Source: Mobula hypostoma
Lineage: Eukaryota
DNA: 64,000 bases
Assembly: GCF_963921235.1 (NCBI RefSeq)
Contig: NC_086106.1
Span: 17,174,001 to 17,238,000 of the forward strand
Direction of reading: 5' to 3'
The notes below the pieces were generated by a model. The model was not told the origin of the DNA and did not search any database. It saw nothing but the letters and a program-made list of their open reading frames with translations. Positions 1,686-15,680 of this stretch are shown here, in pieces. How positions within the stretch are numbered: position 1 is the first letter of the stretch; each line of letters opens with the position of its first letter. Made by a program: the position numbers and the translations under genes.

Positions 1686-2023
1686 TAGATGGGGATCGTC
1701 CCGTGTCGAGTGTGGGTCAGTAATTCTCCACTGGGACACTCTCTCAGGCGACCCAGAGTTGAACGGGCCTGTGATGTGCTCCTTCCTCACTCGCCCGGTC
1801 CCATCCACGTTCTGGTCTCTCTCAGCCCGGGGTGGTCCCGGGGAGACTCTGGGTCAGGGTGGGGCCTGGATGTAGGAGGCAGAAAGGAGATGTCAAGGGC
1901 CGGTCATCCCAGTCCCCTCGCCATTGACCCTACCCCTTCTCCCTTCAAACGCCCCCAGCCCTCCTCCCCACTCTCACCTTCCCCATCTCCCTCCCTCTCC
2001 CGTCGATTCTTGGGCCCAATCCC

Positions 2024-2294
2024 GTTGCTATGGCGATGGGGCATGACGGGCCATCTGGTTGCCGTAGGAACAGGCTTTGATCTGGGCCATCAGCAGTTTC
2101 CATGGTAACGGGTTTGCGTTGGACGTCACTCCCTGGGACACGCAGACCGACTTCGGTGCTTGGGGGCTGCTTGGTGCTCCCTCCCGTTTCTATAGTAACA
2201 GACTGTCGGGGGCTCTGTTGACTCACTCCTGTTGCCATGGTGATAGGCTTCGTCAGTCCTACTTCCATGGGCGAAGACAAGTTGCCATGGTAAT
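2024..2294. promoter_or_regulatory. Cluster of six RFX X-box-like palindromes
   Basis: GTTGCTATGGCGAT 2024, GTTGCCGTAGGAAC 2058, GTTTCCATGGTAAC 2096, GTTTCTATAGTAAC 2186, GTTGCCATGGTGAT 2231, GTTGCCATGGTAAT 2281. Confidence 0.65.
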
Positions 2295-2379
2295 GTGGCT
2301 GGGACGATTGTATTGGCCGACTGGAGACAGGATCCAGCTGGACCGGACCGGCCCAGTCGAGTCTCGATAAAGACAGAGC
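2126..2379 (-). CDS. RBM23: RBM23-like putative terminal coding exon
   Basis: In frame; SVFIETRL and SCLQSANTIVPAT resemble RBM39 FVIDLQTRL and QCFQLSNMFNPQT; weak acceptor; TGA at 2128-2126. Confidence 0.6.
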
Positions 2380-5300
2380 CTGGGGTCCCAGCAGATTCCC
2401 CTCCCCACCCCACAAGCCCCCCAGCCCCCGTTCCGCCCTGTCCTGTCCTGGGTAGCCCAGTAGAGCCCTCACCTGCGGCTGTCGGCATTAGGATCCCGAA
2501 GGGATAGATGTTCTGGAGCTGGAGAGCGGCCTGTGTGGCCGGCGGAATTTCCAGTCCGGATCCTGGGGAGCGAGAGGGGGAAAGCTGAAATCAAGGGGTT
2601 CAGATCGCTCATACTACAAGCCCCGAATCACTGGATCGGATCCCAGCCTGTAACCCACTCCCGGGCATCTGTTATTCTCTATATAAACCACCGAACCCCT
2701 GGATCAGATCCCAGCCTGTAACCCACTCCCAGGGATCTGTTATTTGACAGATAAACCCCCTGAACTCCTGGATCAGATCCCAGCCTGTAACCCACTCCCA
2801 GGGATCTGTTATTTGACAGATAAACCCCCTGAACTCCTGGATCAGATCCCAGCCTGTAACCCACTCCCGGGGATCTGTTATTCTATATATAAACCCCCAA
2901 ACCCCTGGATCAGATCCCAGCCTGTAACCCACTCCCGGGGATCTGTTATTCTATATATAAACCCCGAACCCCTGGATCAGATCCCAGCCTGTAACCCACT
3001 CCCAGGGATCTGTTATTCTCTATATAAACCCCGAACCCCTGGATCAGATCCCAGTCTGTAATCCACTCCCAGAGATCTGTTATTCTATATATAAACCCCC
3101 GAACCCCCGGATCAGATCCCAGGCTGTAACCCACTCCCGGGGATCTGTTATTCTATATATAAACCCCTGAACCCCTGGATCAGATCCCAGCCTGTAACCC
3201 ACTCCCAGGGATCTGTTATTTGACAGATAAACCCCCTGAACTCCTGGATCAGATCCCAGACTGTAACCCACTCCCAGGGATCTGTTATTCTCTATATAAA
3301 CCCCGAACCCCTGGATCAGATCCCAGCCTGTAACCCACTCCCGGGGATCTGTTATTCTATATATAAACCCCCTGAACCCCTGGATCGGATCCCAGCCTGT
3401 AACCCACTCCCAGGGATCTGTTATTCTCTATATAAACCCCGAACCCCTGGATCAGATCCCAGTCTGTAATCCACTCCCAGAGATCTGTTATTCTATATAT
3501 AAACCCCTCAAATACCGGGATCGGATTGCAGCCTGTAACCTACGCCCGGGAATCTGTCATTCTATATAAAAACCCCCGAACTCCTGGACCAGATCTCATC
3601 CTGTAACCCACTCCCGGGGATCTGTCATTCTATATATAAACCCCTGAACCCCTGGATCAGATCCCAATCTGTAACCTATGGCCGGAGATCTGTTATTCTA
3701 TTATACATATAGATCCCCTGGATCAGATGTAATCCACTACCGGGAATCTTTCGTTACATAAACGCTCTGAACCGCCGGATTAGCCCCGGAACTCGTTCCC
3801 CCCTCCACCCGCTCCGTCGAGCAGACCAGGCCTACCCTTAGCGAGGCGAGCCATCAGCTGGAGACGACTGCTGGGTCCCAAGCTGATCCCGGGGCGCTCC
3901 GTGTCCTCGGTGTCCAGGACGGAGGCGGCGGGGTCCGGCTCCCAGCGATCCGTCACCGGGCTCAGCCTCAGCGGCTTCCCCGCCAGCTCGAAGCCCTGCA
4001 GCTGCTGCAGAGCCCGCCGTGCACACTCCGAATCCGCAAACTGCTCCGCGGGGAGGCGGGAGGAAGGGAGAAGGTTCAGGCCGCTTGTCTCACCCCTCGC
4101 CTCCCCTCCCACCCGTCGGAAAGAATCAGGGGCCCGTGTGGTGGCGGCGAAACGAAGTGGGGCTGGCGGAGGGGCGGAGGGGCGGTAGCGACAGAGTTGG
4201 GGGAGACGGACGGTGAGCGGGGTGAGGATGGGGGGAGGGTTGGTGTGAGGGATATAGGATGGAGAGGTGAGGGGGAGTTCCCAGTGCTGCGGGGTGTGAG
4301 GGGGGACACTCACCGTGACGAACCCGTATCCCTTGGAAATTCCGGTCTGTGGGTCCTTAATCAGGTGCAGACTGTCAATCTGTAGGGTTAGAGGCGGGGA
4401 GAATCAGTGGGTGACTGTGAGGGAAGAGAGGGAGGGAGAGGAGCAGAGGGATGTGAACGGGGGACTGAGGTGGACAGAGAGGGAACGGAGGAGAGGGTGG
4501 CAGGGAATAGGTCAGGAGGAAGGGAGCTCCCACCTTGCCGAAGGGCGTGAAGATTGCCCTCAGCATGTCCTGGGTGATGTTGGCATGGAGCGATCCCACG
4601 TAGAGCCTGAGCGGACCATCTCCCGCAATCTGCGGGTGTCCGACCCCGGGGTCTGGACGGTTCTTCTCTGCCTGGCGGTGGGGAGAGGTAAGTAGGTGGT
4701 CAGTCAGCCTGGCTCAGGGTGTACCGGAAGATACCGTCACCTTCCCCCACCCCCATCCCGCGAAACTCCTTCCTTCGTCAAGCTCCCCCCCCCACCCACT
4801 CAGCCTCCCCGCCCCATCGTGCTCGCTGCCCCACGCCCTCCCTACCTGGGATGCCTGAATGATGATGGGGACTCCTAATAATTTTGTTCCGGAGAGACTG
4901 ATCGCCTGCGGGACGCTGTCTACACTGTAAAACTCCACATACGCAATGCCCTTCGATCGCCGGGAGCTGCGGTCCGATATGATCTTCACGTCACGGACCT
5001 GCCAGAGAACCAAGGCGTTAACGTCCTCCCCCATTACACACTCTCGGGGTCAGACACAGAGTGAAACTCCCTCCACACCCACCATCCCATCACACACTCC
5101 TGGGGTCAGACACAGAGTGAAACTCCCTCCACCCGTCGCATCACACACTCCAGGGGTCAGACACAGAGTGAATCTCCCTCCACACCGTCCCATCACACAC
5201 ACCCGGGGTCAGACACAGAGTGAAACTCCCTCCACACCCACCATCCCATCACACACTCCCGGGGTCAGACACAGAGTGAATCTCCCTCCACACCATCCTA

Positions 5301-8300
5301 TCACACACTCCTGGGGTCAGACACAGAGTGAAACTCCTTCCACCCGTCGCATCACACACTCCCGGGGTCAGACACACAGTGAAACTCCCTCCACACCGTC
5401 CCATCACACACTCCCGGGGTCAGACACAGAGTGAAACTCCCTCCACACCGTCCCATCACACACACCCGGGGTCAGACACAGAGTGAAGCTCCCTCCACAC
5501 CGTCCCATCACACATCACTATTCCTGACCTTTCCGACGGAGGAGAAGAAACGTTCCAGATCCCCGGGTCGGATCTGTCCTGAGAGTTGTAAGCAGAGAAT
5601 GGTGCACGCATCTCGCTCTTCTAGAGTGCGTCCGTATACACGGTCCCTGTCCAAGAGAGAGAGGCACTGTGAGGGAGAATCGGAGCATCCTCTCCGTCAG
5701 CCCCTGCTCAGTGACACCACCCTTCCCCAAACCCCTCACTTTCTCTGTGACCCCCGCAGCCCCTTCCATTCCGCCTCTCCCGTCCCCGTGACCCTTTCCA
5801 TACATTCCTCTCCGTCTCCCTGCCCCTTCACCCCACTTGAGACACCCTCTCCCTACACAGCACCCTATCTCTGTGAGCCCCCCCTCCCTGTTCCTCGTTC
5901 CGCAGGGGACCAGCCCGCTGAATTCCGTGACCCTGCTTTGGGAGCCAGACGCCGGATTTCTAAACCGGGGCGAGCGCGTGTGGTCCAGGCACGGCTCTGC
6001 AGCCGGAGCCGGAGCCGGAGCCGGAGCCGCCGTTCGCCCATTTGACTGGGATTTTCACCTGCTGATGCTCCTGGACCTGTAGCGAGGGCTCCTGCTCCTG
6101 CTAAACCTCGGGCTCCGGCTGTGCGATGCGTGGTGCCTGCAAGAGGTGGGCAGCAGAGGTGAGGTGTGGAATCGCCCGGGGAGGGGGGTGGGGGGCGAAT
6201 GTCAGGGTGGCTGCGGAGCGGCTCTTCCCACCTGTGCCTCGCCCGCTCCCTTCGGTGTCGCCCACGGTGGTCCCTGTGACGAGTGCGCCGGCCGCGCGTC
6301 CGCCCTCGCCGTCGGCTCCCGCTCCTCTTCCTCCGCCTCCGGGACCGATGCTGGGATGAGTACCGAGCACGCTCCGTGCTCCCACTGTGTGGGGATAGGG
6401 TAAAGAGAGGCAGGATGGCAGTGAACGAGAGCAGGAAAGAGAGAGAGAGAGGGGGCGAGAGGGGAACTGAGAGACACCGGTCAGTGGACAGATCTCCCCC
6501 TGAGAGACACCAGTCAATGTACAGATCTCCCCCTGAGAGACACTGGTCAGTGTACGGATATCACAAATATCTGTGGAATTCAGTGCCTGTTGAGGCCAAG
6601 TCATTGAGTATATTTAAATCAGAGGCTGGTGCATTGTCGATTAGCCAGGAGAAGGAGAAAGGGAGAGAGGGATACTAAATCAGGCGTACTGGAATGGCGG
6701 CGCAGACATCTGTCAGTGTGCAGATAGGAGAACAGGACATATCAGGAATACCTGCTGTGGCTCCTCAGTTGACTCCCACTCCGATCCCTGGACCTGCGGC
6801 ATTCCCGACTCCCACTCCGATCCCTGGACCTGCGGCATTCCCGACTCCCACTCCGACTGCTGCGCTCACTGTGTCGACCGGAAATTGGAGGCTGGGAACA
6901 GGATCAGACGGCACATCCCCGCATCTATTGTTCCCTTCGACCCCCTACTCCCTCCCCGTCTCCGTGATCTCTCCCTCCCCGTCTCCGTGATCTCTCCCTC
7001 CCCGTCTCCGTGATCTCTCGCTCCCCTACACCCCTCCCCGTCTCCGTGATCTCTCCCTCCCCTACACCCCTCCCCGTCTCCGTGATCTCTCGCTCCCCTA
7101 CACCCCTCCCCGTCTCCGTGATCTCTCCCTCCCCTACACCCCTCCCCGTCTCCGCGATCTCTCCCTCCCCGTCTCCGTCATCTCTCGCTCCCCTACACCC
7201 CTCCCCGTCTCCGTGATCTCTCCCTCCCCTACACCCCTCCCCGTCTCCGTGATCTCTCCCTCCCCTACACCCCTCCCCGTCTCCGTGATCTCTCCCTCCC
7301 CTACACCCCTGCCCGTCTCCGTGATCTCTCCCTCCCCTACACCCCTCCCCGTCTCCGCGATCTCTCCCTCCCCGTCTCCGTCATCTCTCGCTCCCCTACA
7401 CCCCTCCCCGTCTCCGTGATCTCTCCCTCCCCTACACCCCTCCCCGTCTCCGTGATCTCTCCCTCCCCTACACCCCTGCCCGTCTCCGCGATCTCTCCCT
7501 CCCCTACACCCCTCCCCGTCTCCGCGATCTCTCCCTCCCCGTCTCCGTGATCTCTCCCTCCCCTACACCCCTCCCCGTCTCCGTGATCTCTCCCTCCCCG
7601 TCTCCGTGATCTCTCGCTCCCCTACACCCCTCCCCGTCTCCGCGATCTCTCCCTCCCCTACACCCCTCCCCGTCTCCGTGATCTCTCCCTCCCCTACACC
7701 CCTGCCCGTCTCCGCGATCTCTCCCTCCCCTACACCCCTCCCCGTCTCCGCGATCTCTCCCTCCCCGTCTCCGTGATCTCTCCCTCCCCTACACCCCTCC
7801 CCGTCTCCGTGATCTCTCCCTCCCCGTCTCCGTGATCTCTCCCTCCCCTACACCGCTCCCTGTCTCCGTGATCTCTCCCTCCCCGTCTCCGTGATCTCTC
7901 CCTCCCCTACACCCCTCCCTGTCTCCATGATCTCTCCCTCCCCGTCTCCGTGATCTCTCCCTCCCCTACACCCCTCCCCGTCTCCGCGATCTCTCCCTCC
8001 CCGTCTCCGCGATCTCTCCCTCCCCGTCTCCGTGATCTCTCCCTCCCCTACACCCCTCCCTGTCTCCATGATCTCTCCCTCCCCGTCTCCGTGATCTCTC
8101 GCTCCCCTACACCCCTCCCCGTCTCCGTGATCTCTCCCTCCCCTACACCCCTGCCCGTCTCCGCGATCTCTCCCTCCCCTACACCCCTCCCCGTCTCCGC
8201 GATCTCTCCCTCCCCGTCTCCGTGATCTCTCCCTCCCCTACACCCCTCCCTGTCTCCATGATCTCTCCCTCCCCGTCTCCGTGATCTCTCGCTCCCCTAC

Positions 8301-11300
8301 ACCCCTCCCCGTCTCCGTGATCTCTCCCTCCCCTACACCCCTCCCCGTCTCCGTGATCTCTCCCTCCCCTACACCCCTGCCCGTCTCCGCGATCTCTCCC
8401 TCCCCTACACCCCTCCCCGTCTCCGCGATCTCTACCTCCCCGTCTCCGTGATCTCTCCCTCCCCTACACCCCTCCCCGTCTCCGTGATCTCTCCCTCCCC
8501 GTCTCCGTGATCTCTCCCTCCCCTACACCCCTCCCTGTCTCCGTGATCTCTCCCTCCCCGTCTCCGTGATCTCTCCCTCCCCTACACCCCTGCCCGTCTC
8601 CGCGATCTCTCCCTCCCCTACACCCCTCCCCGTCTCCGCGATCTCTCCCTCCCCGTCTCCGTGAGCTCTCCCTCCCCTACACCCCTCCCTGTCTCCGTGA
8701 TCTCTCCCTCCCCGTCTCCGTGATCTCTCGCTCCCCTACACCCCTCCCCGTCTCCGTGATCTCTCCCTCCCCTACACCCCTGCCCGTCTCCGCGATCTCT
8801 CCCTCCCCTACACCCCTCCCCGTCTCCGCGATCTCTCCCTCCCCGTCTCCGTGATCTCTCCCTCCCCTACACCCCTCCCCGTCTCCGTGATCTCTCCCTC
8901 CCCTACACCCCTCCCTGTCTCCATGATCTCTCCCTCCCCGTCTCCGTGATCTCTCCCTCCCCTACACCCCTCCCCGTGTCCGTGATCTCTCCCTCCCCGT
9001 CTCTGTGATCTCTCCCTCCCCTACACCCCTCCCCGTCTCCGTGATCTCTCCCTCCCCTACACCCCTCCCCGTCTCCGCGATCTCTTCCTCCCCTACACCC
9101 CTTCCCGTCTCCGTGATCTCTCCCTCCCCTACACCCCTCCCCGTGTCCGTGATCTCTCCCTCCCCGTCTCCGTGATCTCTCCCTCCCCTACACCCCTCCC
9201 CGTCTCCGTGATCTCTCCCTCCCCGTCTCCGTGATCTCTCCCTCCCCTACACCCCTCCCTGTCTCCGTGATCTCTCCCTCCCCGTCTCCGTGATCTCTCC
9301 CTCCCCTACACCCCTGCCCGTCTCCGCGATCTCTCCCTCCCCTACACCCCTCCCCGTCTCCGCGATCTCTCCCTCCCCGTCTCCGTGATCTCTCCCTCCC
9401 CTACACCCCTCCCTGTCTCCGTGATCTCTCCCTCCCCGTCTCCGTGATCTCTCGCTCCCCTACACCCCTCCCCGTCTCCGTGATCTCTCCCTCCCCTACA
9501 CCCCTGCCCGTCTCCGCGATCTCTCCCTCCCCTACACCCCTCCCCGTCTCCGCGATCTCTTCCTCCCCGTCTCCGTGATCTCTCCCTCCCCTACACCCCT
9601 CCCCGTCTCCGTGATCTCTCCCTCCCCTACACCCCTCCCTGTCTCCATGATCTCTCCCTCCCCGTCTCCGTGATCTCTCCCTCCCCTACACCCCTCCCCG
9701 TGTCCGTGATCTCTCCCTCCCCGTCTCTGTGATCTCTCCCTCCCCTACACCCCTCCCCGTCTCCGTGATCTCTCCCTCCCCTACACCCCTCCCCGTCTCC
9801 GCGATCTCTTCCTCCCCTACACCCCTTCCCGTCTCCGTGATCTCTCCCTCCCCTACACCCCTCCCCGTCTCCGCGATCTCTCCCTCCCCGTCTCCGTGAT
9901 CTCTCCCTCCCCTACACCCCTCCCCGTCTCCGTGATCTCTCCCTCCCCGTCTCCGTGATCTCTCCCTCCCCTACACCCCTCCCCGTGTCCGTGATCTCTC
10001 CCTCCCCGTCTCTGTGATCTCTCCCTCCCCTACACCCCTCCCCGTCTCCGTGATCTCTCCCTCCCCTACACCCCTCCCCGTCTCCGCGATCTCTTCCTCC
10101 CCTACACCCCTTCCCGTCTCCGTGATCTCTCCCTCCCCTACACCCCTCCCCGTGTCCGTGATCTCTCCCTCCCCGTCTCCGTGATCTCTCCCTCCCCTAC
10201 ACCCCTCCCCGTCTCCGTGATCTCTCCCTCCCCGTCTCCGTGATCTCTCCCTCCCCTACACCCCTCCCTGTCTCCGTGATCTCTCCCTCCCCGTCTCCGT
10301 GATCTCTCCCTCCCCTACACCCCTGCCCGTCTCCGCGATCTCTCCCTCCCCTACACCCCTCCCCGTCTCCGCGATCTCTCCCTCCCCGTCTCCGTGATCT
10401 CTCCCTCCCCTACACCCCTCCCTGTCTCCGTGATCTCTCCCTCCCCGTCTCCGTGATCTCTCGCTCCCCTACACCCCTCCCCGTCTCCGTGATCTCTCCC
10501 TCCCCTACACCCCTGCCCGTCTCCGCGATCTCTCCCTCCCCTACACCCCTCCCCGTCTCCGCGATCTCTCCCTCCCCGTCTCCGTGATCTCTCCCTCCCC
10601 TACACCCCTCCCCGTCTCCGTGATCTCTCCCTCCCCGTCTCCGTGATCTCTCCCTCCCCTACACCCCTCCCTGTCTCCATGATCTCTCCCTCCCCGTCTC
10701 CGTGATCTCTCCCTCCCCTACACCCCTCCCCGTGTCCGTGATCTCTCCCTCCCCGTCTCTGTGATCTCTCCCTCCCCTACACCCCTCCCCGTCTCCGTGA
10801 TCTCTCCCTCCCCTACACCCCTCCCCGTCTCCGCGATCTCTTCCTCCCCTACACCCCTTCCCGTCTCCGTGATCTCTCCCTCCCCTACACCCCTCCCCGT
10901 GTCCGTGATCTCTCCCTCCCCTACACCCCTCCCCGTCTCCGTAATCTATCCCTCCCCGTCTCCGTGATGTCTCCCTCCCCGTCTCCGTGATCTAACTCTT
11001 CCCTACACTACACCCTCCCCTCTCCAACTCACTCCCCTCGCCTACACTCTTCCTCGTCCTCGTGACTCCTCTCTTTCCTACACCCCTCTCCTTCTCCGTC
11101 ACTTCTCCCTCCCCTACAGCCTTTCCTATCTCCCTCAACCCCTCCCCTACATCCCCCTGCCTCCCCATCAGCCTTTCCCTTCTCCGTCACCCCCTTCCCT
11201 CCTCTACACCCCTTCCCATCTCCGTGACCCCTTCCTCTCCCTACACCCTTTCGCTTCTCGTGACACCCTGCTCCCCTACTCCCCTCCCCGTCTCCGTGAC

Positions 11301-14300
11301 CCCCACCCTACCCTACAGACCTCCGCGTCTGGTTACCCCTCCCTCCCCTACACCCCTCTCCGTCTCCGAGACCGTCTTGCATCCCTACCCGTATCTGTGA
11401 CCTCTTCTGGTCCCTACCACTCCCCCCGCCCCACGACTTTGTAATAACGGACACTGTCCCATCCGGATTTGGGACTCTCCCCCACCCCCCCTCACCTGCC
11501 GGTGTTTCCTTTGACCTGTTCCTTCTTGTTCAGGTGCTTCTCCTGGGTGGCAGAGAGGGAATTACTGAGCCTCCCTTCCCGACAGGTTCTCCCGACTGCG
11601 GGCGGGCCACAGGGCAGCGGACAATTCCCGGGCCTTGTCCGCGTCCGGCCTTCCCCTTCCTCCTGCGCTCCCCCCCCCTCGCCTCTGCATGCTCCTCCCC
11701 AGGGCTTTCCGGGATCGGATGGGATGTGGGGAGTGGTCTGTTTGGGAATGAACCCCAGGTACGGGATCAGATTGTATCGCGCAGTGTGGAATTGGGAATG
11801 GACCTCGGGAATTTGGGAAGGTGTCACAACTGTGGGTGGGATCAGGGCGTGGGAAGTGGTTGGGATTGGGGAGAAATTGGGATTGGCAATCAGATGGAGA
11901 AGGGGGTAACAGATTGAACTGGATTTGGGAATGGGAATTAGGAGAGGTGAGAGTGGAAACGAGGGAGAAGGGGCGGTATTGGAAAGCGGTGTGATTGATA
12001 TAGATTGGGAATCGATATGGGATTGGGGGTACAAATGGGAATCAGATTGGGTTTGCGCAAGGGAAAGTGACAGGGAAAGGAACAAGATCCAGGAATGATA
12101 ACGGGATTTCCATTCGGGAGTGGAATTCGTGAAAGGGTTTGGACTGCGGGAAGTGCAAAGGGGGTTTGGAATTGGGGATGGGACGGGTGGAGGGATGGGA
12201 TTGGAAAGGAAAATTGGGATTGAGTGTGAAAGCGTCAGTGGGAAGGGCGGTTAAGATTTGCAAGCAGGTGGGATCGGGAAGAGGGGACTAGGGAAGGGCC
12301 GGGGATAGTAGGTGGGAATTCCAGGGGAAGGGTCATTGAGAAAGGGTTGAGAACGGGAAGGGGCGCAGGGAAAGGTGAAGGAATTGGGATGGAGAGGGAA
12401 AACGGGAGACACCTGGAAACCTACCGCGCCTCCACACAAACATTCTCGCACACCCCCCTCTCTCGTGCAGCGAATCTGGACGCTCTGAGGGAACCTCGGG
12501 GAAGGAGCCGCAAGGAGGGAGGTTGTTGGGCTGAGCAGCAGAGGCGGAAGAGGCCGGGAGGTGGGGTGGGGGTGTGGAGAAGTGCAGACCCCGACTGCTG
12601 GAAGGGGGGTCTCCCACCCTCCTCCACCAGCACCCCCCGACACTCGCTCACGTACAGTACCTGGGATCTTGCTATGCATCACCACGGGGCAATGTCTCGG
12701 TGCATCCTAACCCTGCGGCAACACAGTACATTCAAGAGAGAGAAGAAAATGGTCAAACGGTTTGCAGTGAACAGCTGGGAGGGTGAGGGAAGGTACGGAG
12801 GGAGAGGGAAGGTGAAGGAGGGAGAGGAAAGGTAGGGAGGGTGAGGGAAGGTAAGGGAGGGAGAGGAAAGGTAAGGGAGGGAGAGGGAAGGGAGGGAGAG
12901 GAAATGTAAGGGAGGAAGATGGAAGGTAAGGGGGGTAAGGGAAGGTAGGGAGGGTGAGGGAAGGTACGGAGGGTGAGGGAAGGTGAGGGAGGGAGAGGAA
13001 AGGTAAGGGAGGGAGAGGAAAGGTAGGGAGGGAGATGGAAGGTAAGGGAGGGTAAGGGAAGGTAAGGGAGGGAGAGGGAAGGTAGGGAGGGTGAGGGAAG
13101 GTAAGGGAGGGAGAGGCAAAGGAGGTAGAGGAAAGGTAGGGAGGGAGATGGAAGGTAAGGGAGGGTGAGGGAAGGTAAGGGAGGGAGAGGGAAGGTAGGG
13201 AGGGTGAAGGAAGGTAAGGGAGGGAGATGGAAGGGAGGGAGAGGAAAGGTAGGGAGGGAGAGGGAAGGGAGGAAGAGGAAAGGTAAGGGAGGGAGATGGA
13301 AGGTAAGGGGGGTAAGGGAAGGTAGGGAGGGTGAGGGAAGGTACGGAGGGTGAGGGAAGGTGAGGGAGGGAGAGGAAAGGTGAGGGAGGGAGAGGAAAGG
13401 TAAGGGAGGGAAGGGGAAGGGAGGGAGAGGAAAGGTAGGGAGGGAGATGGAAGGTAAGGGGGGTAAGGAAAGATAAGGGAGGGTGATGGAAGGTAAGGGA
13501 GGGAGAGGGAAGGTAGGGAGGGTGAGGGAAGGTAAGGGAGAGAGAGGGAAGGTAGGGAGAGTGAGGGAAGGTAAGGGAGGGAGAGGCAAAGGAGGGAGAG
13601 GAAAGGTAGGGAGGGAGATGGAAGGTAAGGGAGGGTAAGGGAAGGTAAGGGTGGGTGAGGGAAGGTACGGAGGGTGAGGGAAGGTGAGGGAGGGAGAGGA
13701 AAGGTAAGGGAGGGAGAGGAAAGGTAGGGAGGGAGATGGAAGGTAAGGGAGGGTAAGGGAAGGTAAGGGAGGGAGAGGGAAGGTAGGGAGGGTGAGGGAA
13801 GGTAAGGGAGGGAGAGGCAAAGGAGGGAGAGGAAAGGTAGGGAGGGAGATGGAAGGTAAGGGAGGGTGAGGGAAGGTAAGGGAGGGAGAGGGAAGGTAGG
13901 GAGGGTGAAGGAAGGTAAGGGAGGGAGATGGAAGGGAGGGAGAGGAAAGGTAGGGAGGGAGAGGGAAGGGAGGAAGAGGAAAGGTAAGGGAGGGAGATGG
14001 AAGGTAAGGGGGGTAAGGGAAGGTAGGGAGGGTGAGGGAAGGTACGGAGGGTGAGGGAAGGTGAGGGAGGGAGAGGAAAGGTGAGGGAGGGAGAGGAAAG
14101 GTAAGGGAGGGAAGGGGAAGGGAGGGAGAGGAAAGGTAGGGAGGGAGATGGAAGGTAAGGGGGGTAAGGAAAGATAAGGGAGGGTGATGGAAGGTAAGGG
14201 AGGGAGAGGGAAGGTAGGGAGGGTGAGGGAAGGTAAGGGAGAGAGAGGGAAGGTAGGGAGAGTGAGGGAAGGTAAGGGAGGGAGAGGCAAAGGAGGGAGA

Positions 14301-14801
14301 GGAAAGGTAGGGAGGGAGATGGAAGGTAAGGGAGGGTAAGGGAAGGTAAGGGTGGGTGAGGGAAGGTGAGGGAGAGGAACGGTAAGGGAGGGTGAGATCT
14401 GTTGCTGGAGATAGTAGGGTGGCGGGGGGGGAGGGTGTTGGGACGGGGATGGGTGCAGCTTGATAGGGCGTGTCAGATTCCGTGGGACTGTTGCTGGTGT
14501 GACAACCTCACAACACGTAACGTGACGTGTTGACATAGAAAATCCTAATGGGTCCGGACGTTGACAGAGGAATTCCCAATGGCGAGAGGAGGGATGATTG
14601 TGGGGTGGGTGGGGGTGAAGGAGTGGAGAGGGGTGGGTGGGAGTGGGGAACAACTTCCAGGAACTCTGAGAGCCAAGGAACCAGGAGCCCGAGAGGGAGG
14701 AGGTGGCGGGCTTTAAACAGTCCGCCCGTTACCTTCTTCTGGTAGGGAGCTTCCAACATCGCCTCGATGACGAGGTCAAAATCGTCCGACGATGACATCA
14801 T
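2126..14801 (-). CDS. RBM23: RBM23-like (RBM39/CAPER family) splicing factor, about 456 aa; coding exons 14801-14733, 11542-11496, 6384-6232, 6136-6059, 5646-5529, 4998-4846, 4671-4534, 4379-4314, 4040-3836, 2562-2473, 2379-2126
   Basis: All introns are GT-AG with consistent phases (1371 nt in total). N-terminus SSDDFDLVIEAMLEAPYQKK matches RBM23 (MASDDFDIVIEAMLEAPYKK). RS region, RRM1 (KGIAYVEF), RRM2 (LYVGSL, KGYGFVTF, ECARRAL). No third RRM/UHM. RBM23 versus RBM39 orthology needs a tree. Confidence 0.88.
2473..2562 (-). CDS. RBM23: RBM23-like exon (SGLEIPPATQAALQLQNIYPFG...)
   Basis: Similar to RBM39 TGLQIPPAAQQALQ; strong polypyrimidine acceptor, donor CAG/gtgagg. Confidence 0.88.
2625..3780. 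repeat. About 68-bp intronic minisatellite (CTGGATCAGATCCCAGCCTGTAACCCACTCCC...TATATAAACCCC)
   Basis: Tandem units at 67-69 bp spacing. Confidence 0.95.
3836..4040 (-). CDS. RBM23: RBM23-like RRM2 end and linker exon (FADSECARRAL...RLQLMARLAK)
   Basis: 205 nt; matches FSDSECA(K/R)(K/R)ALEQLNGFELAG...RLQLMARLAE. Confidence 0.95.
4314..4379 (-). CDS. RBM23: RBM23-like RRM2 RNP1 exon (IDSLHLIKDPQTGISKGYGFVT)
   Basis: 66 nt; acceptor ctacag, donor ACG/gtgagt. Confidence 0.93.
4534..4671 (-). CDS. RBM23: RBM23-like linker/RRM2 exon (AEKNR...RLYVGSLHANITQDMLRAIFTPFGK)
   Basis: RNP2 motif; 138 nt; canonical splice sites. Confidence 0.95.
4846..4998 (-). CDS. RBM23: RBM23-like RRM1 C-terminal exon (VRDVKIISDRSSRRSKGIAYVEF...LLGVPIIIQASQ)
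   Basis: Strong RBM39/RBM23 similarity; 153 nt; within ORF 4714..5034. Confidence 0.95.
5030..5515. repeat. About 52-bp intronic minisatellite (CACACACTCCCGGGGTCAGACACAGAGTGAAACTCCCTCCACACCGTCCCAT)
   Basis: About 9 tandem units. Confidence 0.93.
5529..5646 (-). CDS. RBM23: RBM23-like RRM1 N-terminal exon (EERDACTILCLQLSGQIRPGDLERFFSSVGK)
   Basis: Similar to EERDARTVFCMQLAARIRPRDLEDFFSAVGK; 118 nt with canonical splice sites. Confidence 0.92.
6059..6136 (-). CDS. RBM23: RBM23-like RS exon (HSRSPRFSRSRSPRYRSRS)
   Basis: Acceptor cctcttgcag, donor CAG/gtgaaa; 78 nt, frame preserving. Confidence 0.82.
6232..6384 (-). CDS. RBM23: RBM23-like Arg/Ser-rich exon
   Basis: Acceptor ccccacacag, donor CAG/gtggga; 153 nt; RSRRRRKRSGSRRR. 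Confidence 0.82.
6950..11000. repeat. About 4-kb C-rich minisatellite of mixed 36-bp and 23-bp units (CCGTGATCTCTCCCTCCCCTACACCCCTCCCCGTCT / CCGTGATCTCTCCCTCCCCGTCT), degenerate to about 11400
   Basis: Direct inspection. Confidence 0.97.
11496..11542 (-). CDS. RBM23: RBM23-like coding exon 2 (EKHLNKKEQVKGNTG)
   Basis: Acceptor ctctctgccacccag, donor CAG/gtgagg; 47 nt, phase 0 to 2 fits both neighbours. Confidence 0.75.
12652..12712 (-). other. Candidate poison (PTC) cassette exon of the RBM23-like gene, 52 or 61 nt
   Basis: Strong acceptor ttttcttctctctcttgaatgtactgtgttgccgcag/GGTTAG with in-frame TAG at 12709-12707; donors CAG/gtactg (12661) or TAC/gtgagc (12652). Confidence 0.7.
12777..14395. 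repeat. Polypurine (plus) / polypyrimidine (gene-sense) low-complexity tandem array with a 701-bp internal duplication
   Basis: GGGAAGGTAAGGGAGGGAGAGG-type units; identical ORFs at 13165 and 13866. Confidence 0.95.
14733..14801 (-). CDS. RBM23: RBM23-like first coding exon (MMSSSDDFDLVIEAMLEAPYQKK); the exon starts at 14827 with 5' UTR
   Basis: Acceptor tttcccag/G at 14827, donor AAG/gtaacg; conserved IEAMLEAPY motif. Confidence 0.93.
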
Positions 14802-14924: not shown

Positions 14925-15680
14925 CCCTGTAACCCACTCCCGGGGATCTGTGATTCTATATATAAACCCCCCGGAACCCCTGGATCAGAAGCCAGCCGGT
15001 ACCCCACTCCCGGGGATCTATTATTCTTTATATAAACTTCTGGATCAGATCCCAGCCTGTAACCCACTCCCAGGGATCTGTTATTCTATATATAAACTCC
15101 TGGATCAGATCCCAGCCTGTAACCCACTCCCGGGGATCTGTTATTCTATATATAATCCCCGAACCCCTGGATCAGATCCCAGCCTGTAACCCACTCCCAG
15201 AGATCCGTTATTCTATATACAAACCTCTGAACCCGTGGATCAGATCCCAGCCTGTAACCCACTCCCAGGGATCTGTTATTCTATATATAATCCCCGAACC
15301 CCTGGATCAGATCCCAGCCTGTAACCCACTCCCAGAGATCCGTTATTCTATATACAAACCTCTGAACCCCTGGATCAGATCCCAGCCTGTAACCCACTCC
15401 CAGAGATCCGTTATTCTATATACAAACCTCTGAACCCGTGGATCAGATCCCAGCCTGTAACCCACTCCCAGAGATCTGTTATTCTATATATAAACCCCCG
15501 AACCCCTGGATCAGATCCCAGCCTGTAACTCAGAATTTCGGTGGGGTTTGTATATGGAACAACAGAGACGCGGGACTGGGTTACAAGATGGATCTAGACT
15601 AGGGTTCGCAGGGTTATGTACAGAATAACCGTGTCCCCGGGAATGGGTTACAGGCCGGGATTTGATCCGGGGGATCGGAG
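14925..15680. repeat. Second array of the 68-bp minisatellite family (about 14925-15530) followed by about 2 degenerate inverted units
   Basis: Same unit as 2625-3780; GGGTTACAGGCCGGGATTTGATCCGGGG is the reverse complement. Confidence 0.85.

What the first reader, a model, noticed from the sequence alone, without database searches (positions are those of the whole stretch)
12652..12775. Candidate poison exon suggests RBM39-style NMD autoregulation in an RBM23-like gene
Seen: in the intron after the first coding exon, between low-complexity tracts, is a short unique island. It has a strong acceptor (ttttcttctctctct...ttgccgcag), the exon GGTTAGGATGCACCGAGACATTGCCCCGTGGTGATGCATAGCAAGATCCCAG(GTACTGTAC), and two donors giving 52 or 61 nt. 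In the phase-0 frame its second codon is TAG, so translation stops after 24 codons, far upstream of the later junctions. Known: RBM39 autoregulates through a conserved poison exon (exon 2b) in the equivalent intron. From memory the human exon starts GGTTAGGATGCA and contains CAAGATCCCAGGTACTGTA, but I cannot verify that here. Inference: the poison-exon circuit predates the RBM39/RBM23 duplication and survives in this paralogue, possibly allowing cross-regulation by RBM39.
Basis: partly seen in the sequence, partly recalled or inferred. Interest (0 to 1): 0.85.

Follow-up and report, generated by a model that had tools for sequence, protein, structure and literature searches.

The report
Conserved candidate poison exon, ray RBM23
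A short stop-codon-bearing exon-like element in an intron of the devil ray RBM23-like splicing-factor gene is better conserved between rays and sawfish than the gene's own coding exons, so it is probably a real "poison exon", but it is unrelated in sequence to the known RBM39 poison exon and no transcript evidence could be obtained.

Summary
The sequence is there as described: minus strand, acceptor AG, a 52-nt exon at 12712-12661 whose second codon is TAG, and donor GTACTG. The window is Mobula hypostoma. The gene is its RBM23 orthologue: 424 aa, no UHM, and it groups with tetrapod RBM23 in a tree.

Splice-site quality and the stop codon alone are no better than chance. Conservation is the real evidence. 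The island aligns to the orthologous intron of the sawfish Pristis pectinata at 88% over 156 nt (exon 92%). The gene's coding exons are only 66-85% identical. The acceptor AG, the GGT-TAG stop and the GT donor are all kept. A 1-nt indel (52 vs 51 nt) shows the element is non-coding. The second donor (61-nt form) is not conserved.

The authentic RBM39 exon 2b was located in hamster using the published human primers, and it is 81% conserved to medaka. It has no detectable similarity to the island by BLAST or nhmmer. The recalled motif GGTTAGGATGCA is absent from it. [quoted passage not shown] Only the intron position is shared.

RNA contigs showed neither the exon nor the neighbouring constitutive exon, so inclusion is untested.

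Verdict: a plausible, lineage-restricted new member of a known class.

The parts
12661..12712 (-). Candidate poison cassette exon, 52 nt (51 nt in Pristis). GGT at 12712-12710, in-frame TAG at 12709-12707.
   Evidence: Sequence read. Translation E1+exon stops after 24 codons. 92.3% identical to Pristis L001 3596-3646, with one 1-nt indel.
12713..12772 (-). Conserved upstream intronic flank. It holds a branch-point-like UUUGAC about 41 nt from the AG, the pyrimidine tract UUUUCUUCUCUCUCUU, no other AG before the acceptor, and the acceptor AG at 12714-12713.
   Evidence: 89% identical to Pristis. Alignment A1. Branch point and AG-free zone were read directly from the sequence.
12641..12660 (-). 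Conserved downstream flank with the 5' splice site CAG|GUACUG. The Mobula-only second donor GTGAGC follows at 12651.
   Evidence: 18/20 identical to Pristis. The second donor reads GCGAGC in Pristis.
14733..14801 (-). Conserved start codon and first conserved coding exon (MMSSSDDFDLVIEAMLEAPYQKK), ending in phase 0.
   Evidence: Only 85% identical to Pristis.
11496..11542 (-). Next constitutive exon (47 nt, EKHLNKKEQVKGNTG). It is skipped in the RefSeq model but is needed for the 424-aa ORF that matches the sawfish architecture.
12777..14396 (-). 1.6-kb minisatellite (20-nt unit, about 85 copies), pyrimidine-rich on the gene strand. It fills the intron between the first coding exon and the island.
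   Evidence: Tandem Repeats Finder. Pristis has only a short CT-rich stretch at this position.
1822..6868 (-). Remaining ten coding exons: 6868-6752, 6384-6232, 6136-6059, 5646-5529, 4998-4846, 4671-4534, 4379-4314, 4040-3836, 2562-2473, 1865-1822. They place at least 10 exon junctions downstream of the premature stop.
   Evidence: The splice-consistent model reproduces the C-terminal 387 residues of RefSeq protein P0001 exactly.

Best explanation
The island is a regulated cassette exon of the batoid RBM23 orthologue. When it is spliced in between the first conserved coding exon and the 47-nt second exon, translation stops at a TAG that is the exon's second codon. That stop is 24 codons from the conserved start and upstream of at least 10 exon junctions, so the mRNA should be removed by nonsense-mediated decay. 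The likely use is dosage control of this splicing factor (unproductive splicing).

Shown here: the element exists, and it is single-copy and non-coding. It is more conserved than the coding exons. Its AG, GT and TAG are preserved across two batoid orders.

Inferred: that it is actually spliced in, that the product is degraded, and that inclusion responds to RBM23 or RBM39 levels.

The exon is not a recognisable sequence homologue of RBM39 exon 2b. Only the intron position is shared. It either arose separately or has turned over completely since the RBM39/RBM23 duplication.
For: - Island 12794-12641 matches Pristis L001 3512-3666 at 87.8% (E 4e-48). The first coding exon region is 70.6% and the second exon region 68%.
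- Per-exon table: candidate exon 92.3%, flanks 89-90%, coding exons 66-85%.
- The acceptor AG, GGT-TAG and CAG|GTACTG are invariant. A 1-nt indel inside the exon rules out coding.
- Genomic contigs of two further related species keep 12574-12790 at 97-98.6%. Their adjacent intron is 85-94% identical or not alignable, and depth is single-copy.
- The stop falls after 24 codons, with at least 10 downstream junctions.
- No Rfam family and no significant fold, so a structured RNA gene is unlikely.
- Precedent for paralogue-specific, non-homologous poison exons: Lareau & Brenner 2015 (PMC4379411).
Against: - There is no transcript evidence. Four RNA-type runs that hold a downstream exon of the gene gave no contig on the candidate exon. 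They also gave none on the neighbouring constitutive 47-nt exon, so the test had no positive control.
- Splice signals are weak by a crude score.
- Conservation is shown only within batoids. Shark and chimaera DNA could not be fetched.
- Bird and frog RBM23 lack the element.
- A stop this close to the start codon can weaken NMD (general knowledge).
Confidence: 0.55

Rival explanations
1. The island is a conserved intronic regulatory element that is never spliced in. It could be a splicing enhancer or silencer that helps define the small 47-nt exon or the long repeat-filled intron, or a transcriptional enhancer. On this reading the AG, GT and TAG are incidental.
For: No RNA contig covers it. 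Splice scores are weak. Conservation extends about 60 nt upstream of the putative acceptor. The second exon is tiny and lies in a repeat-rich intron.
Against: The conserved block is centred on an exon-sized unit that has a pyrimidine tract, an AG-free zone, an AG and a GT at its edges. This profile, with the exon most conserved and the flanks slightly less, is that of conserved alternative exons. Under this reading the in-frame TAG at the second codon is kept in both species for no reason.
Confidence: 0.25
2. One reading: the exon is the direct descendant of the ancestral RBM39/RBM23 poison exon and still works by the RBM39 exon 2b mechanism. In that mechanism RRM2 binds at the 3' splice site and the UHM recruits U2 snRNP. 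The sequence would have diverged beyond recognition.
For: It lies in the same intron, entered in phase 0 after the …EAPY(K/Q)K(K) exon, in Mobula, Pristis, hamster RBM39 and medaka RBM39. A BS2-like heptamer (CCGUUUG in Mobula, CCAUUUG in Pristis) is conserved 43-49 nt upstream of the acceptor.
Against: RBM39 exon 2b is about 81% conserved from hamster to medaka and 98.6% from human to Xenopus (PMC6547761). Even so, BLAST (word 7, E up to 0.05) and profile nhmmer --max find no similarity to the island in either direction. The recalled start GGTTAGGATGCA occurs only in the sawfish RBM23 locus. No N(G/U)NUUUG abuts the AG. Bird and frog RBM23 have neither element. The ray protein lacks the UHM that the RBM39 mechanism needs (Campagne 2023).
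Confidence: 0.07
3. A chance pseudo-exon in neutrally evolving intron.
For: Crude scanning finds other AG…GT pairs nearby with equal or better scores. A stop in a 52-nt random exon is expected.
Against: 88-92% identity against about 70% background between two batoid orders (binomial about 1e-7), and higher than every coding exon.
Confidence: 0.03
4. An intron-hosted small RNA (for example a mirtron-like hairpin or snoRNA) explains the conservation.
For: Sub-threshold Rfam hits to mirtron families at 12549-12645, next to the exon (E 0.17-0.9, 19-23 bits against gathering scores of 60-105).
Against: The hits lie outside the conserved block, which ends at 12641. The fold z-scores are +0.94 for the island and -1.0 for the hairpin. 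No compensatory changes are seen.
Confidence: 0.03

Closest known systems
RBM39 exon 2b poison exon (Campagne et al. 2023, PMC10477243; Pervouchine et al. 2019, PMC6547761)
   Same: A short cassette in the intron that follows the …EAPYKK coding exon (phase 0) of a member of the same gene family. It carries an in-frame stop, has weak splice sites, and shows very high nucleotide conservation with conserved intronic flanks.
   Different: The sequences are unrelated: 73 nt running ACTTGCC…CATAAG against 52 nt running GGTTAGG…CCCAG, with no BLAST or nhmmer hit. The island has no CUCUUUG site at the acceptor and no ACCUUUG inside the exon pairing with the donor. The stop is at codon 2 rather than codon 24 of the exon. 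The host protein lacks the UHM. Autoregulation was shown experimentally for RBM39 and is untested here.
Ultraconserved poison exons of SR and TRA2 genes, and their turnover among paralogues (Lareau & Brenner 2015, PMC4379411)
   Same: A splicing-factor gene with a non-coding cassette exon that is more conserved than the coding sequence. The paralogues carry non-homologous poison exons.
   Different: Here the two paralogues use the same intron position, whereas most SR paralogues use different introns. Conservation is shown only within batoids. No EST or RNA support is available.
BRD2/BRD3 independently evolved unproductive splicing (PMC10789245, title and abstract only)
   Same: Paralogues that reach the same regulatory end by elements that evolved independently.
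   Different: Those cases depend on conserved complementary RNA structures. No significant or covarying structure was found here.

Membership tests
AS-NMD poison cassette exon | Bounded by an AG acceptor with branch point and pyrimidine tract, and by a GT donor | tested here: met
   Present in Mobula and invariant in Pristis. Crude strength is below that of the constitutive exons.
AS-NMD poison cassette exon | In-frame premature stop more than 50-55 nt upstream of the last exon junction | tested here: met
   TAG at 12709-12707 in the frame set by exon 1. At least 10 downstream junctions. The TAG is kept in Pristis, where the exon is 51 nt, so the stop rather than a frameshift is the conserved feature.
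AS-NMD poison cassette exon | Non-coding constraint at nucleotide level, equal to or above that of coding exons | tested here: met
   92% for the exon and 89-90% for the flanks, against 66-85% for the coding exons. A 1-nt indel lies inside the exon.
AS-NMD poison cassette exon | Inclusion seen in transcripts | tested here: inconclusive
   No contigs from four RNA-type runs lay on the exon or on the adjacent constitutive exon, so there was no positive control. The first set of holders were genomic.
AS-NMD poison cassette exon | Inclusion isoform stabilised when NMD or translation is blocked | not testable with these tools
   Needs an experiment or matched public data for a batoid.
Homologue of RBM39 exon 2b | Located in the homologous intron and phase | tested here: met
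   The preceding exon ends …EAPY(K/Q/R)K(K) in phase 0 in Mobula, Pristis, hamster RBM39 and medaka RBM39.
Homologue of RBM39 exon 2b | Sequence similarity to exon 2b and its flanks | tested here: not met
   blastn (word 7, E up to 0.05) and nhmmer --max profiles run in both directions found no hit. The four-way alignment shows no shared block. GGTTAGGATGCA is absent from the hamster RBM39 locus.
Homologue of RBM39 exon 2b | RRM2 site CUCUUUG / N(G/U)NUUUG directly before the acceptor AG (BS1) | tested here: not met
   The acceptor context is …guguugccgcag. The only UUUG heptamers are CCGUUUG (Mobula) and CCAUUUG (Pristis), 43-49 nt upstream, and both have C at the G/U position (motif).
Homologue of RBM39 exon 2b | [quoted passage not shown] | tested here: not met
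   There is no such heptamer in the exon. The predicted stem instead pairs the acceptor with the middle of the exon. It is rich in G-U pairs, shows no covariation, and the island fold z-score is +0.94.
Homologue of RBM39 exon 2b | Inclusion depends on RBM39 protein | not testable with these tools
   Needs a minigene or knock-down experiment.
RBM23 orthologue (host gene) | Groups with RBM23 rather than RBM39 in a family tree | tested here: met
   When the tree is rooted on invertebrate RBM39, the chondrichthyan genes join Latimeria 'RBM39-like' and tetrapod RBM23 on the far side of a 99/98 branch from vertebrate RBM39. Long branches call for caution.
RBM23 orthologue (host gene) | Two RRMs plus the RBM39 linker, with no C-terminal UHM | tested here: met
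   The 424-aa model ends 40 residues after the linker. Pfam families on the product are RRM_1 and RBM39linker only.
RBM23 orthologue (host gene) | Synteny with PRMT5 and the MYH6/7 neighbourhood | tested here: inconclusive
   Parrot RBM23 is next to PRMT5. The stingray orthologue is next to a myosin heavy chain gene. No PRMT5 3' exons were found in this window by tblastx.

The most novel reading that the evidence does not exclude
RBM39 and RBM23, the two paralogues left by the vertebrate duplication, both keep a poison exon in the same first coding intron. This would be a positional relic of a pre-duplication circuit whose sequence has been completely replaced in the RBM23 line. Because ray RBM23 lacks the UHM needed to recruit U2 snRNP, its exon would be read by RBM39. 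RBM39 would then set RBM23 dosage by cross-regulation rather than autoregulation.
Probability: 0.1. Interest if true: 0.6.

Novelty: new member of a known kind. Interest (0 to 1): 0.38.

Why it matters
Poison exons are the main homeostatic control of splicing factors and are being pursued as drug and antisense targets. RBM39's poison exon is well studied. No RBM23 poison exon turned up in the paper library.

If the batoid exon is real, RBM23 joins the list. It would also give a clean example of two paralogues with unrelated poison exons in the same intron, which bears on how quickly such circuits are replaced after gene duplication.

The practical lesson for the scan is different.

Tried and rejected
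1. RNA support. The first run search with the island returned only genomic contigs of related species, with no joints. The second search with a downstream exon found RNA-type runs, but nothing lay on the candidate exon or on the 47-nt exon. This is uninformative rather than negative.

2. Orthologous loci of stingray, electric ray, white shark, catshark, and the sawfish RBM39a. Depth of conservation beyond batoids and the chondrichthyan RBM39 exon therefore remain unknown.

3. An N-terminal-region protein search meant to list more chondrichthyan orthologues was swamped by RS-repeat words.

4. An exact 24-mer scan of metagenome contigs gave no hit.

5. Structured-RNA reading. Rfam gave only sub-threshold miRNA-family hits beside the block, and the fold z-scores are not significant. 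A predicted stem over the acceptor has no covariation.

6. Splice-site strength as evidence. A crude position-weight scan showed the candidate is not exceptional.

7. Supplementary files of Campagne 2023 do not print the exon sequence. Its primers were used instead to fix the exon in hamster.

Full report
**What is in the window.**
The order is:
- a pyrimidine tract;
- about 20 nt of mixed sequence ending …ttgccgcag;
- a 52-nt unit at 12712-12661 that begins GGT TAG;
- a donor GTACTG;
- nine bases later, a second donor GTGAGC.

The upstream coding exon (ATG at 14801, MMSSSDDFDLVIEAMLEAPYQKK) ends in phase 0 at 14733. The next exon begins at 11542 and ends at 11496, so it is 47 nt long. Joining exon 1 to the candidate gives 24 codons and then TAG.

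**Host gene and organism.**
An exon-10 peptide found a 100% identical RefSeq protein, 'probable RNA-binding protein 23 [Mobula hypostoma]' (P0001). It also found a 76% identical sawfish protein (P0002, Pristis pectinata).

A splice-consistent model of 12 coding exons gives a 424-aa protein. It reproduces the last 387 residues of P0001 exactly and has the same architecture as the sawfish protein. It has two RRMs and the RBM39 linker but no UHM.

In a maximum-likelihood tree rooted on invertebrate RBM39, the chondrichthyan genes sit with coelacanth 'RBM39-like' and tetrapod RBM23. A branch with 99/98 support separates them from vertebrate RBM39. Calling the gene RBM23-like is therefore justified. 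Long branches call for some caution.

**Is the candidate more than chance?**
On splice signals, no. A crude position-weight scan scores the acceptor at 2.5, against 3.5-4.5 for this gene's constitutive exons. The donors score 4.1 and 4.5, against 7-10. Other AG…GT pairs in the same unique island score higher. A stop codon in a random 52-nt insert is expected.

The island is not a known RNA family, and it does not fold better than shuffled sequence (z +0.94).

**Conservation is the real evidence.**
The sawfish locus (L001) aligns to window 12794-12641 at 87.8% over 156 nt (E 4e-48). The region of the first coding exon aligns at 70.6% and that of the second exon at 68%.

| Segment | Identity to Pristis |
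|---|---|
| Candidate exon | 92.3% |
| 60-nt upstream flank | 89% |
| 20-nt downstream flank | 90% |
| Coding exons | 66-85% |

With a 70% background, the binomial tail for 137/156 matches is about 1e-7.

In alignment A1 the following are invariant:
- the branch-point-like UUUGAC;
- the pyrimidine tract;
- the AG-free stretch and the acceptor AG;
- GGT-TAG;
- CAG|GTACTG.

The exon is 51 nt in the sawfish, because of a 1-nt deletion. It therefore cannot be coding, and the conserved 'poison' feature is the TAG rather than a frameshift. The second in-exon TAG and the second donor (GC in sawfish) are not conserved. The 52/51-nt form is the relevant one.

Genomic contigs of related species support this (runs X1-X4, no joints, so DNA). 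Two of them keep 12574-12790 at 97-98.6%. Their neighbouring intron is 85-94% identical or not alignable. Depth is single-copy, so the island is not a dispersed repeat.

**Comparison with the real RBM39 poison exon.**
Campagne et al. 2023 describe exon 2b as follows: a CUCUUUG site (BS1) directly before the acceptor AG, and an exonic ACCUUUG (BS2) that can pair with the donor.

Their human primers dj777 and dj778 match a hamster RBM39 locus (L002) perfectly at 2220-2241 and 2506-2525. Between them lies …ctctttgtag | a 73-nt exon at 2340-2412, running ACTTGCC…CATAAG | gtagta. It contains ACCTTTG and an in-frame TAA. This is the authentic exon.

It aligns to medaka RBM39 (L005) at 81% over 158 nt (E 1e-34). 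That fits the published 98.6% identity between human and Xenopus (PMC6547761).

The ray/sawfish island shows no similarity to it:
- blastn with word size 7 and E up to 0.05 found nothing;
- nhmmer --max, with profiles built from each pair and run in both directions, found nothing;
- a forced four-way alignment shows no shared block;
The later blastn and nhmmer searches with the island likewise found nothing in the frog and medaka loci.

The recollection was wrong, and no BS1-type site abuts the acceptor.

What is shared is position. In all four genes the preceding exon ends …EAPY(K/Q/R)K(K) in phase 0. Parrot RBM23 (L003, next to PRMT5) and frog RBM23 (L004) contain neither element. The parrot intron is pure minisatellite.

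**Transcript evidence.**
None could be obtained. Four RNA-type runs that hold exon 10 of the gene yielded no contig on the candidate exon. They also yielded none on the constitutive 47-nt exon. Only a 160-nt intronic piece was laid. The result is therefore uninformative rather than negative.

**Most likely mechanism.**
I read the island as a conserved, weakly defined cassette exon. Its inclusion puts a stop 24 codons into the ORF, ahead of at least 10 exon junctions. That would commit the mRNA to nonsense-mediated decay and so set the level of this splicing factor.

- *Shown:* the anatomy and the constraint.
- *Inferred:* inclusion, decay and feedback.

Who reads the exon is open. The conserved pyrimidine tract, extended in Mobula by a 1.6-kb CU-rich minisatellite, would suit PTB- or PCBP-type repressors. 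A BS2-like CC(G/A)UUUG overlaps the putative branch point. The ray protein lacks the UHM that RBM39 uses to recruit U2 snRNP. If a family member is involved, RBM39 is therefore the better candidate. All of this paragraph's second half is speculation.

**Evolution and novelty.**
The claim that the circuit predates the duplication and 'survives' here is not supported. Turnover or independent origin is at least as likely, and has precedent among SR gene paralogues (Lareau & Brenner 2015, PMC4379411).

The paper library holds no description of an RBM23 poison exon. The scan's notes for this genome list other poison-exon candidates but none for RBM39 or RBM23.

I class the element as a probable new member of a known kind. 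Interest is moderate.

Noticed in passing
window 11496-11542 and 6868-6891; upstream exons at 21482-21294, about 18185-17931, 16272-15928: The RefSeq protein for this gene (657 aa) skips the 47-nt second exon and uses an acceptor 23 nt upstream of the one that fits the sawfish architecture. Its 230-residue N-terminal extension comes from three upstream exons that orthologues do not translate, and is probably 5' UTR read as coding.
   Followed up: partly
window 6900-11000: A roughly 4-kb minisatellite inside the second intron is open in all three minus-strand frames and reads as RS-like 'GRERSRRRGGRDHGD…'. It mimics the RS domain of the host protein and is a trap for gene predictors.
   Followed up: no
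window 12777-14396: A 20-nt-period, 85-copy minisatellite, pyrimidine-rich on the gene strand, abuts the conserved island. The sawfish has only a short CT-rich stretch there. It could act as a large binding platform for pyrimidine-tract proteins next to the candidate exon.
   Followed up: partly
window 14926-15498 and 2621-3787; L001 2135-2990 and 8096-8742: A 68-nt tandem unit flanking and inside the gene is shared with the sawfish locus at 85-92% identity, at the same two places (upstream of the first coding exon, and in the intron after exon 10).
   Followed up: no
window 12549-12645: A GC-rich hairpin just downstream of the candidate exon gives sub-threshold Rfam hits to mirtron-type miRNA families (19-23 bits, E 0.17-0.9). 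Its fold z-score is -1.0 and it is poorly conserved in sawfish.
   Followed up: yes
window 2016-2294: Another first-reader note calls this the last coding exon and 3' UTR. In the model that reproduces the RefSeq protein it lies in the intron between exons 2562-2473 and 1865-1822.
   Followed up: partly
L003 3070-4540 and 4750-5200: In the parrot, the RBM23 intron after its first coding exon, and a downstream intron a few exons later, are filled by a roughly 20-nt GGGGTTAATGGGGTCCCAAT-type minisatellite. Repeat-filled 5' introns seem to be a recurring trait of RBM23 genes.
   Followed up: no
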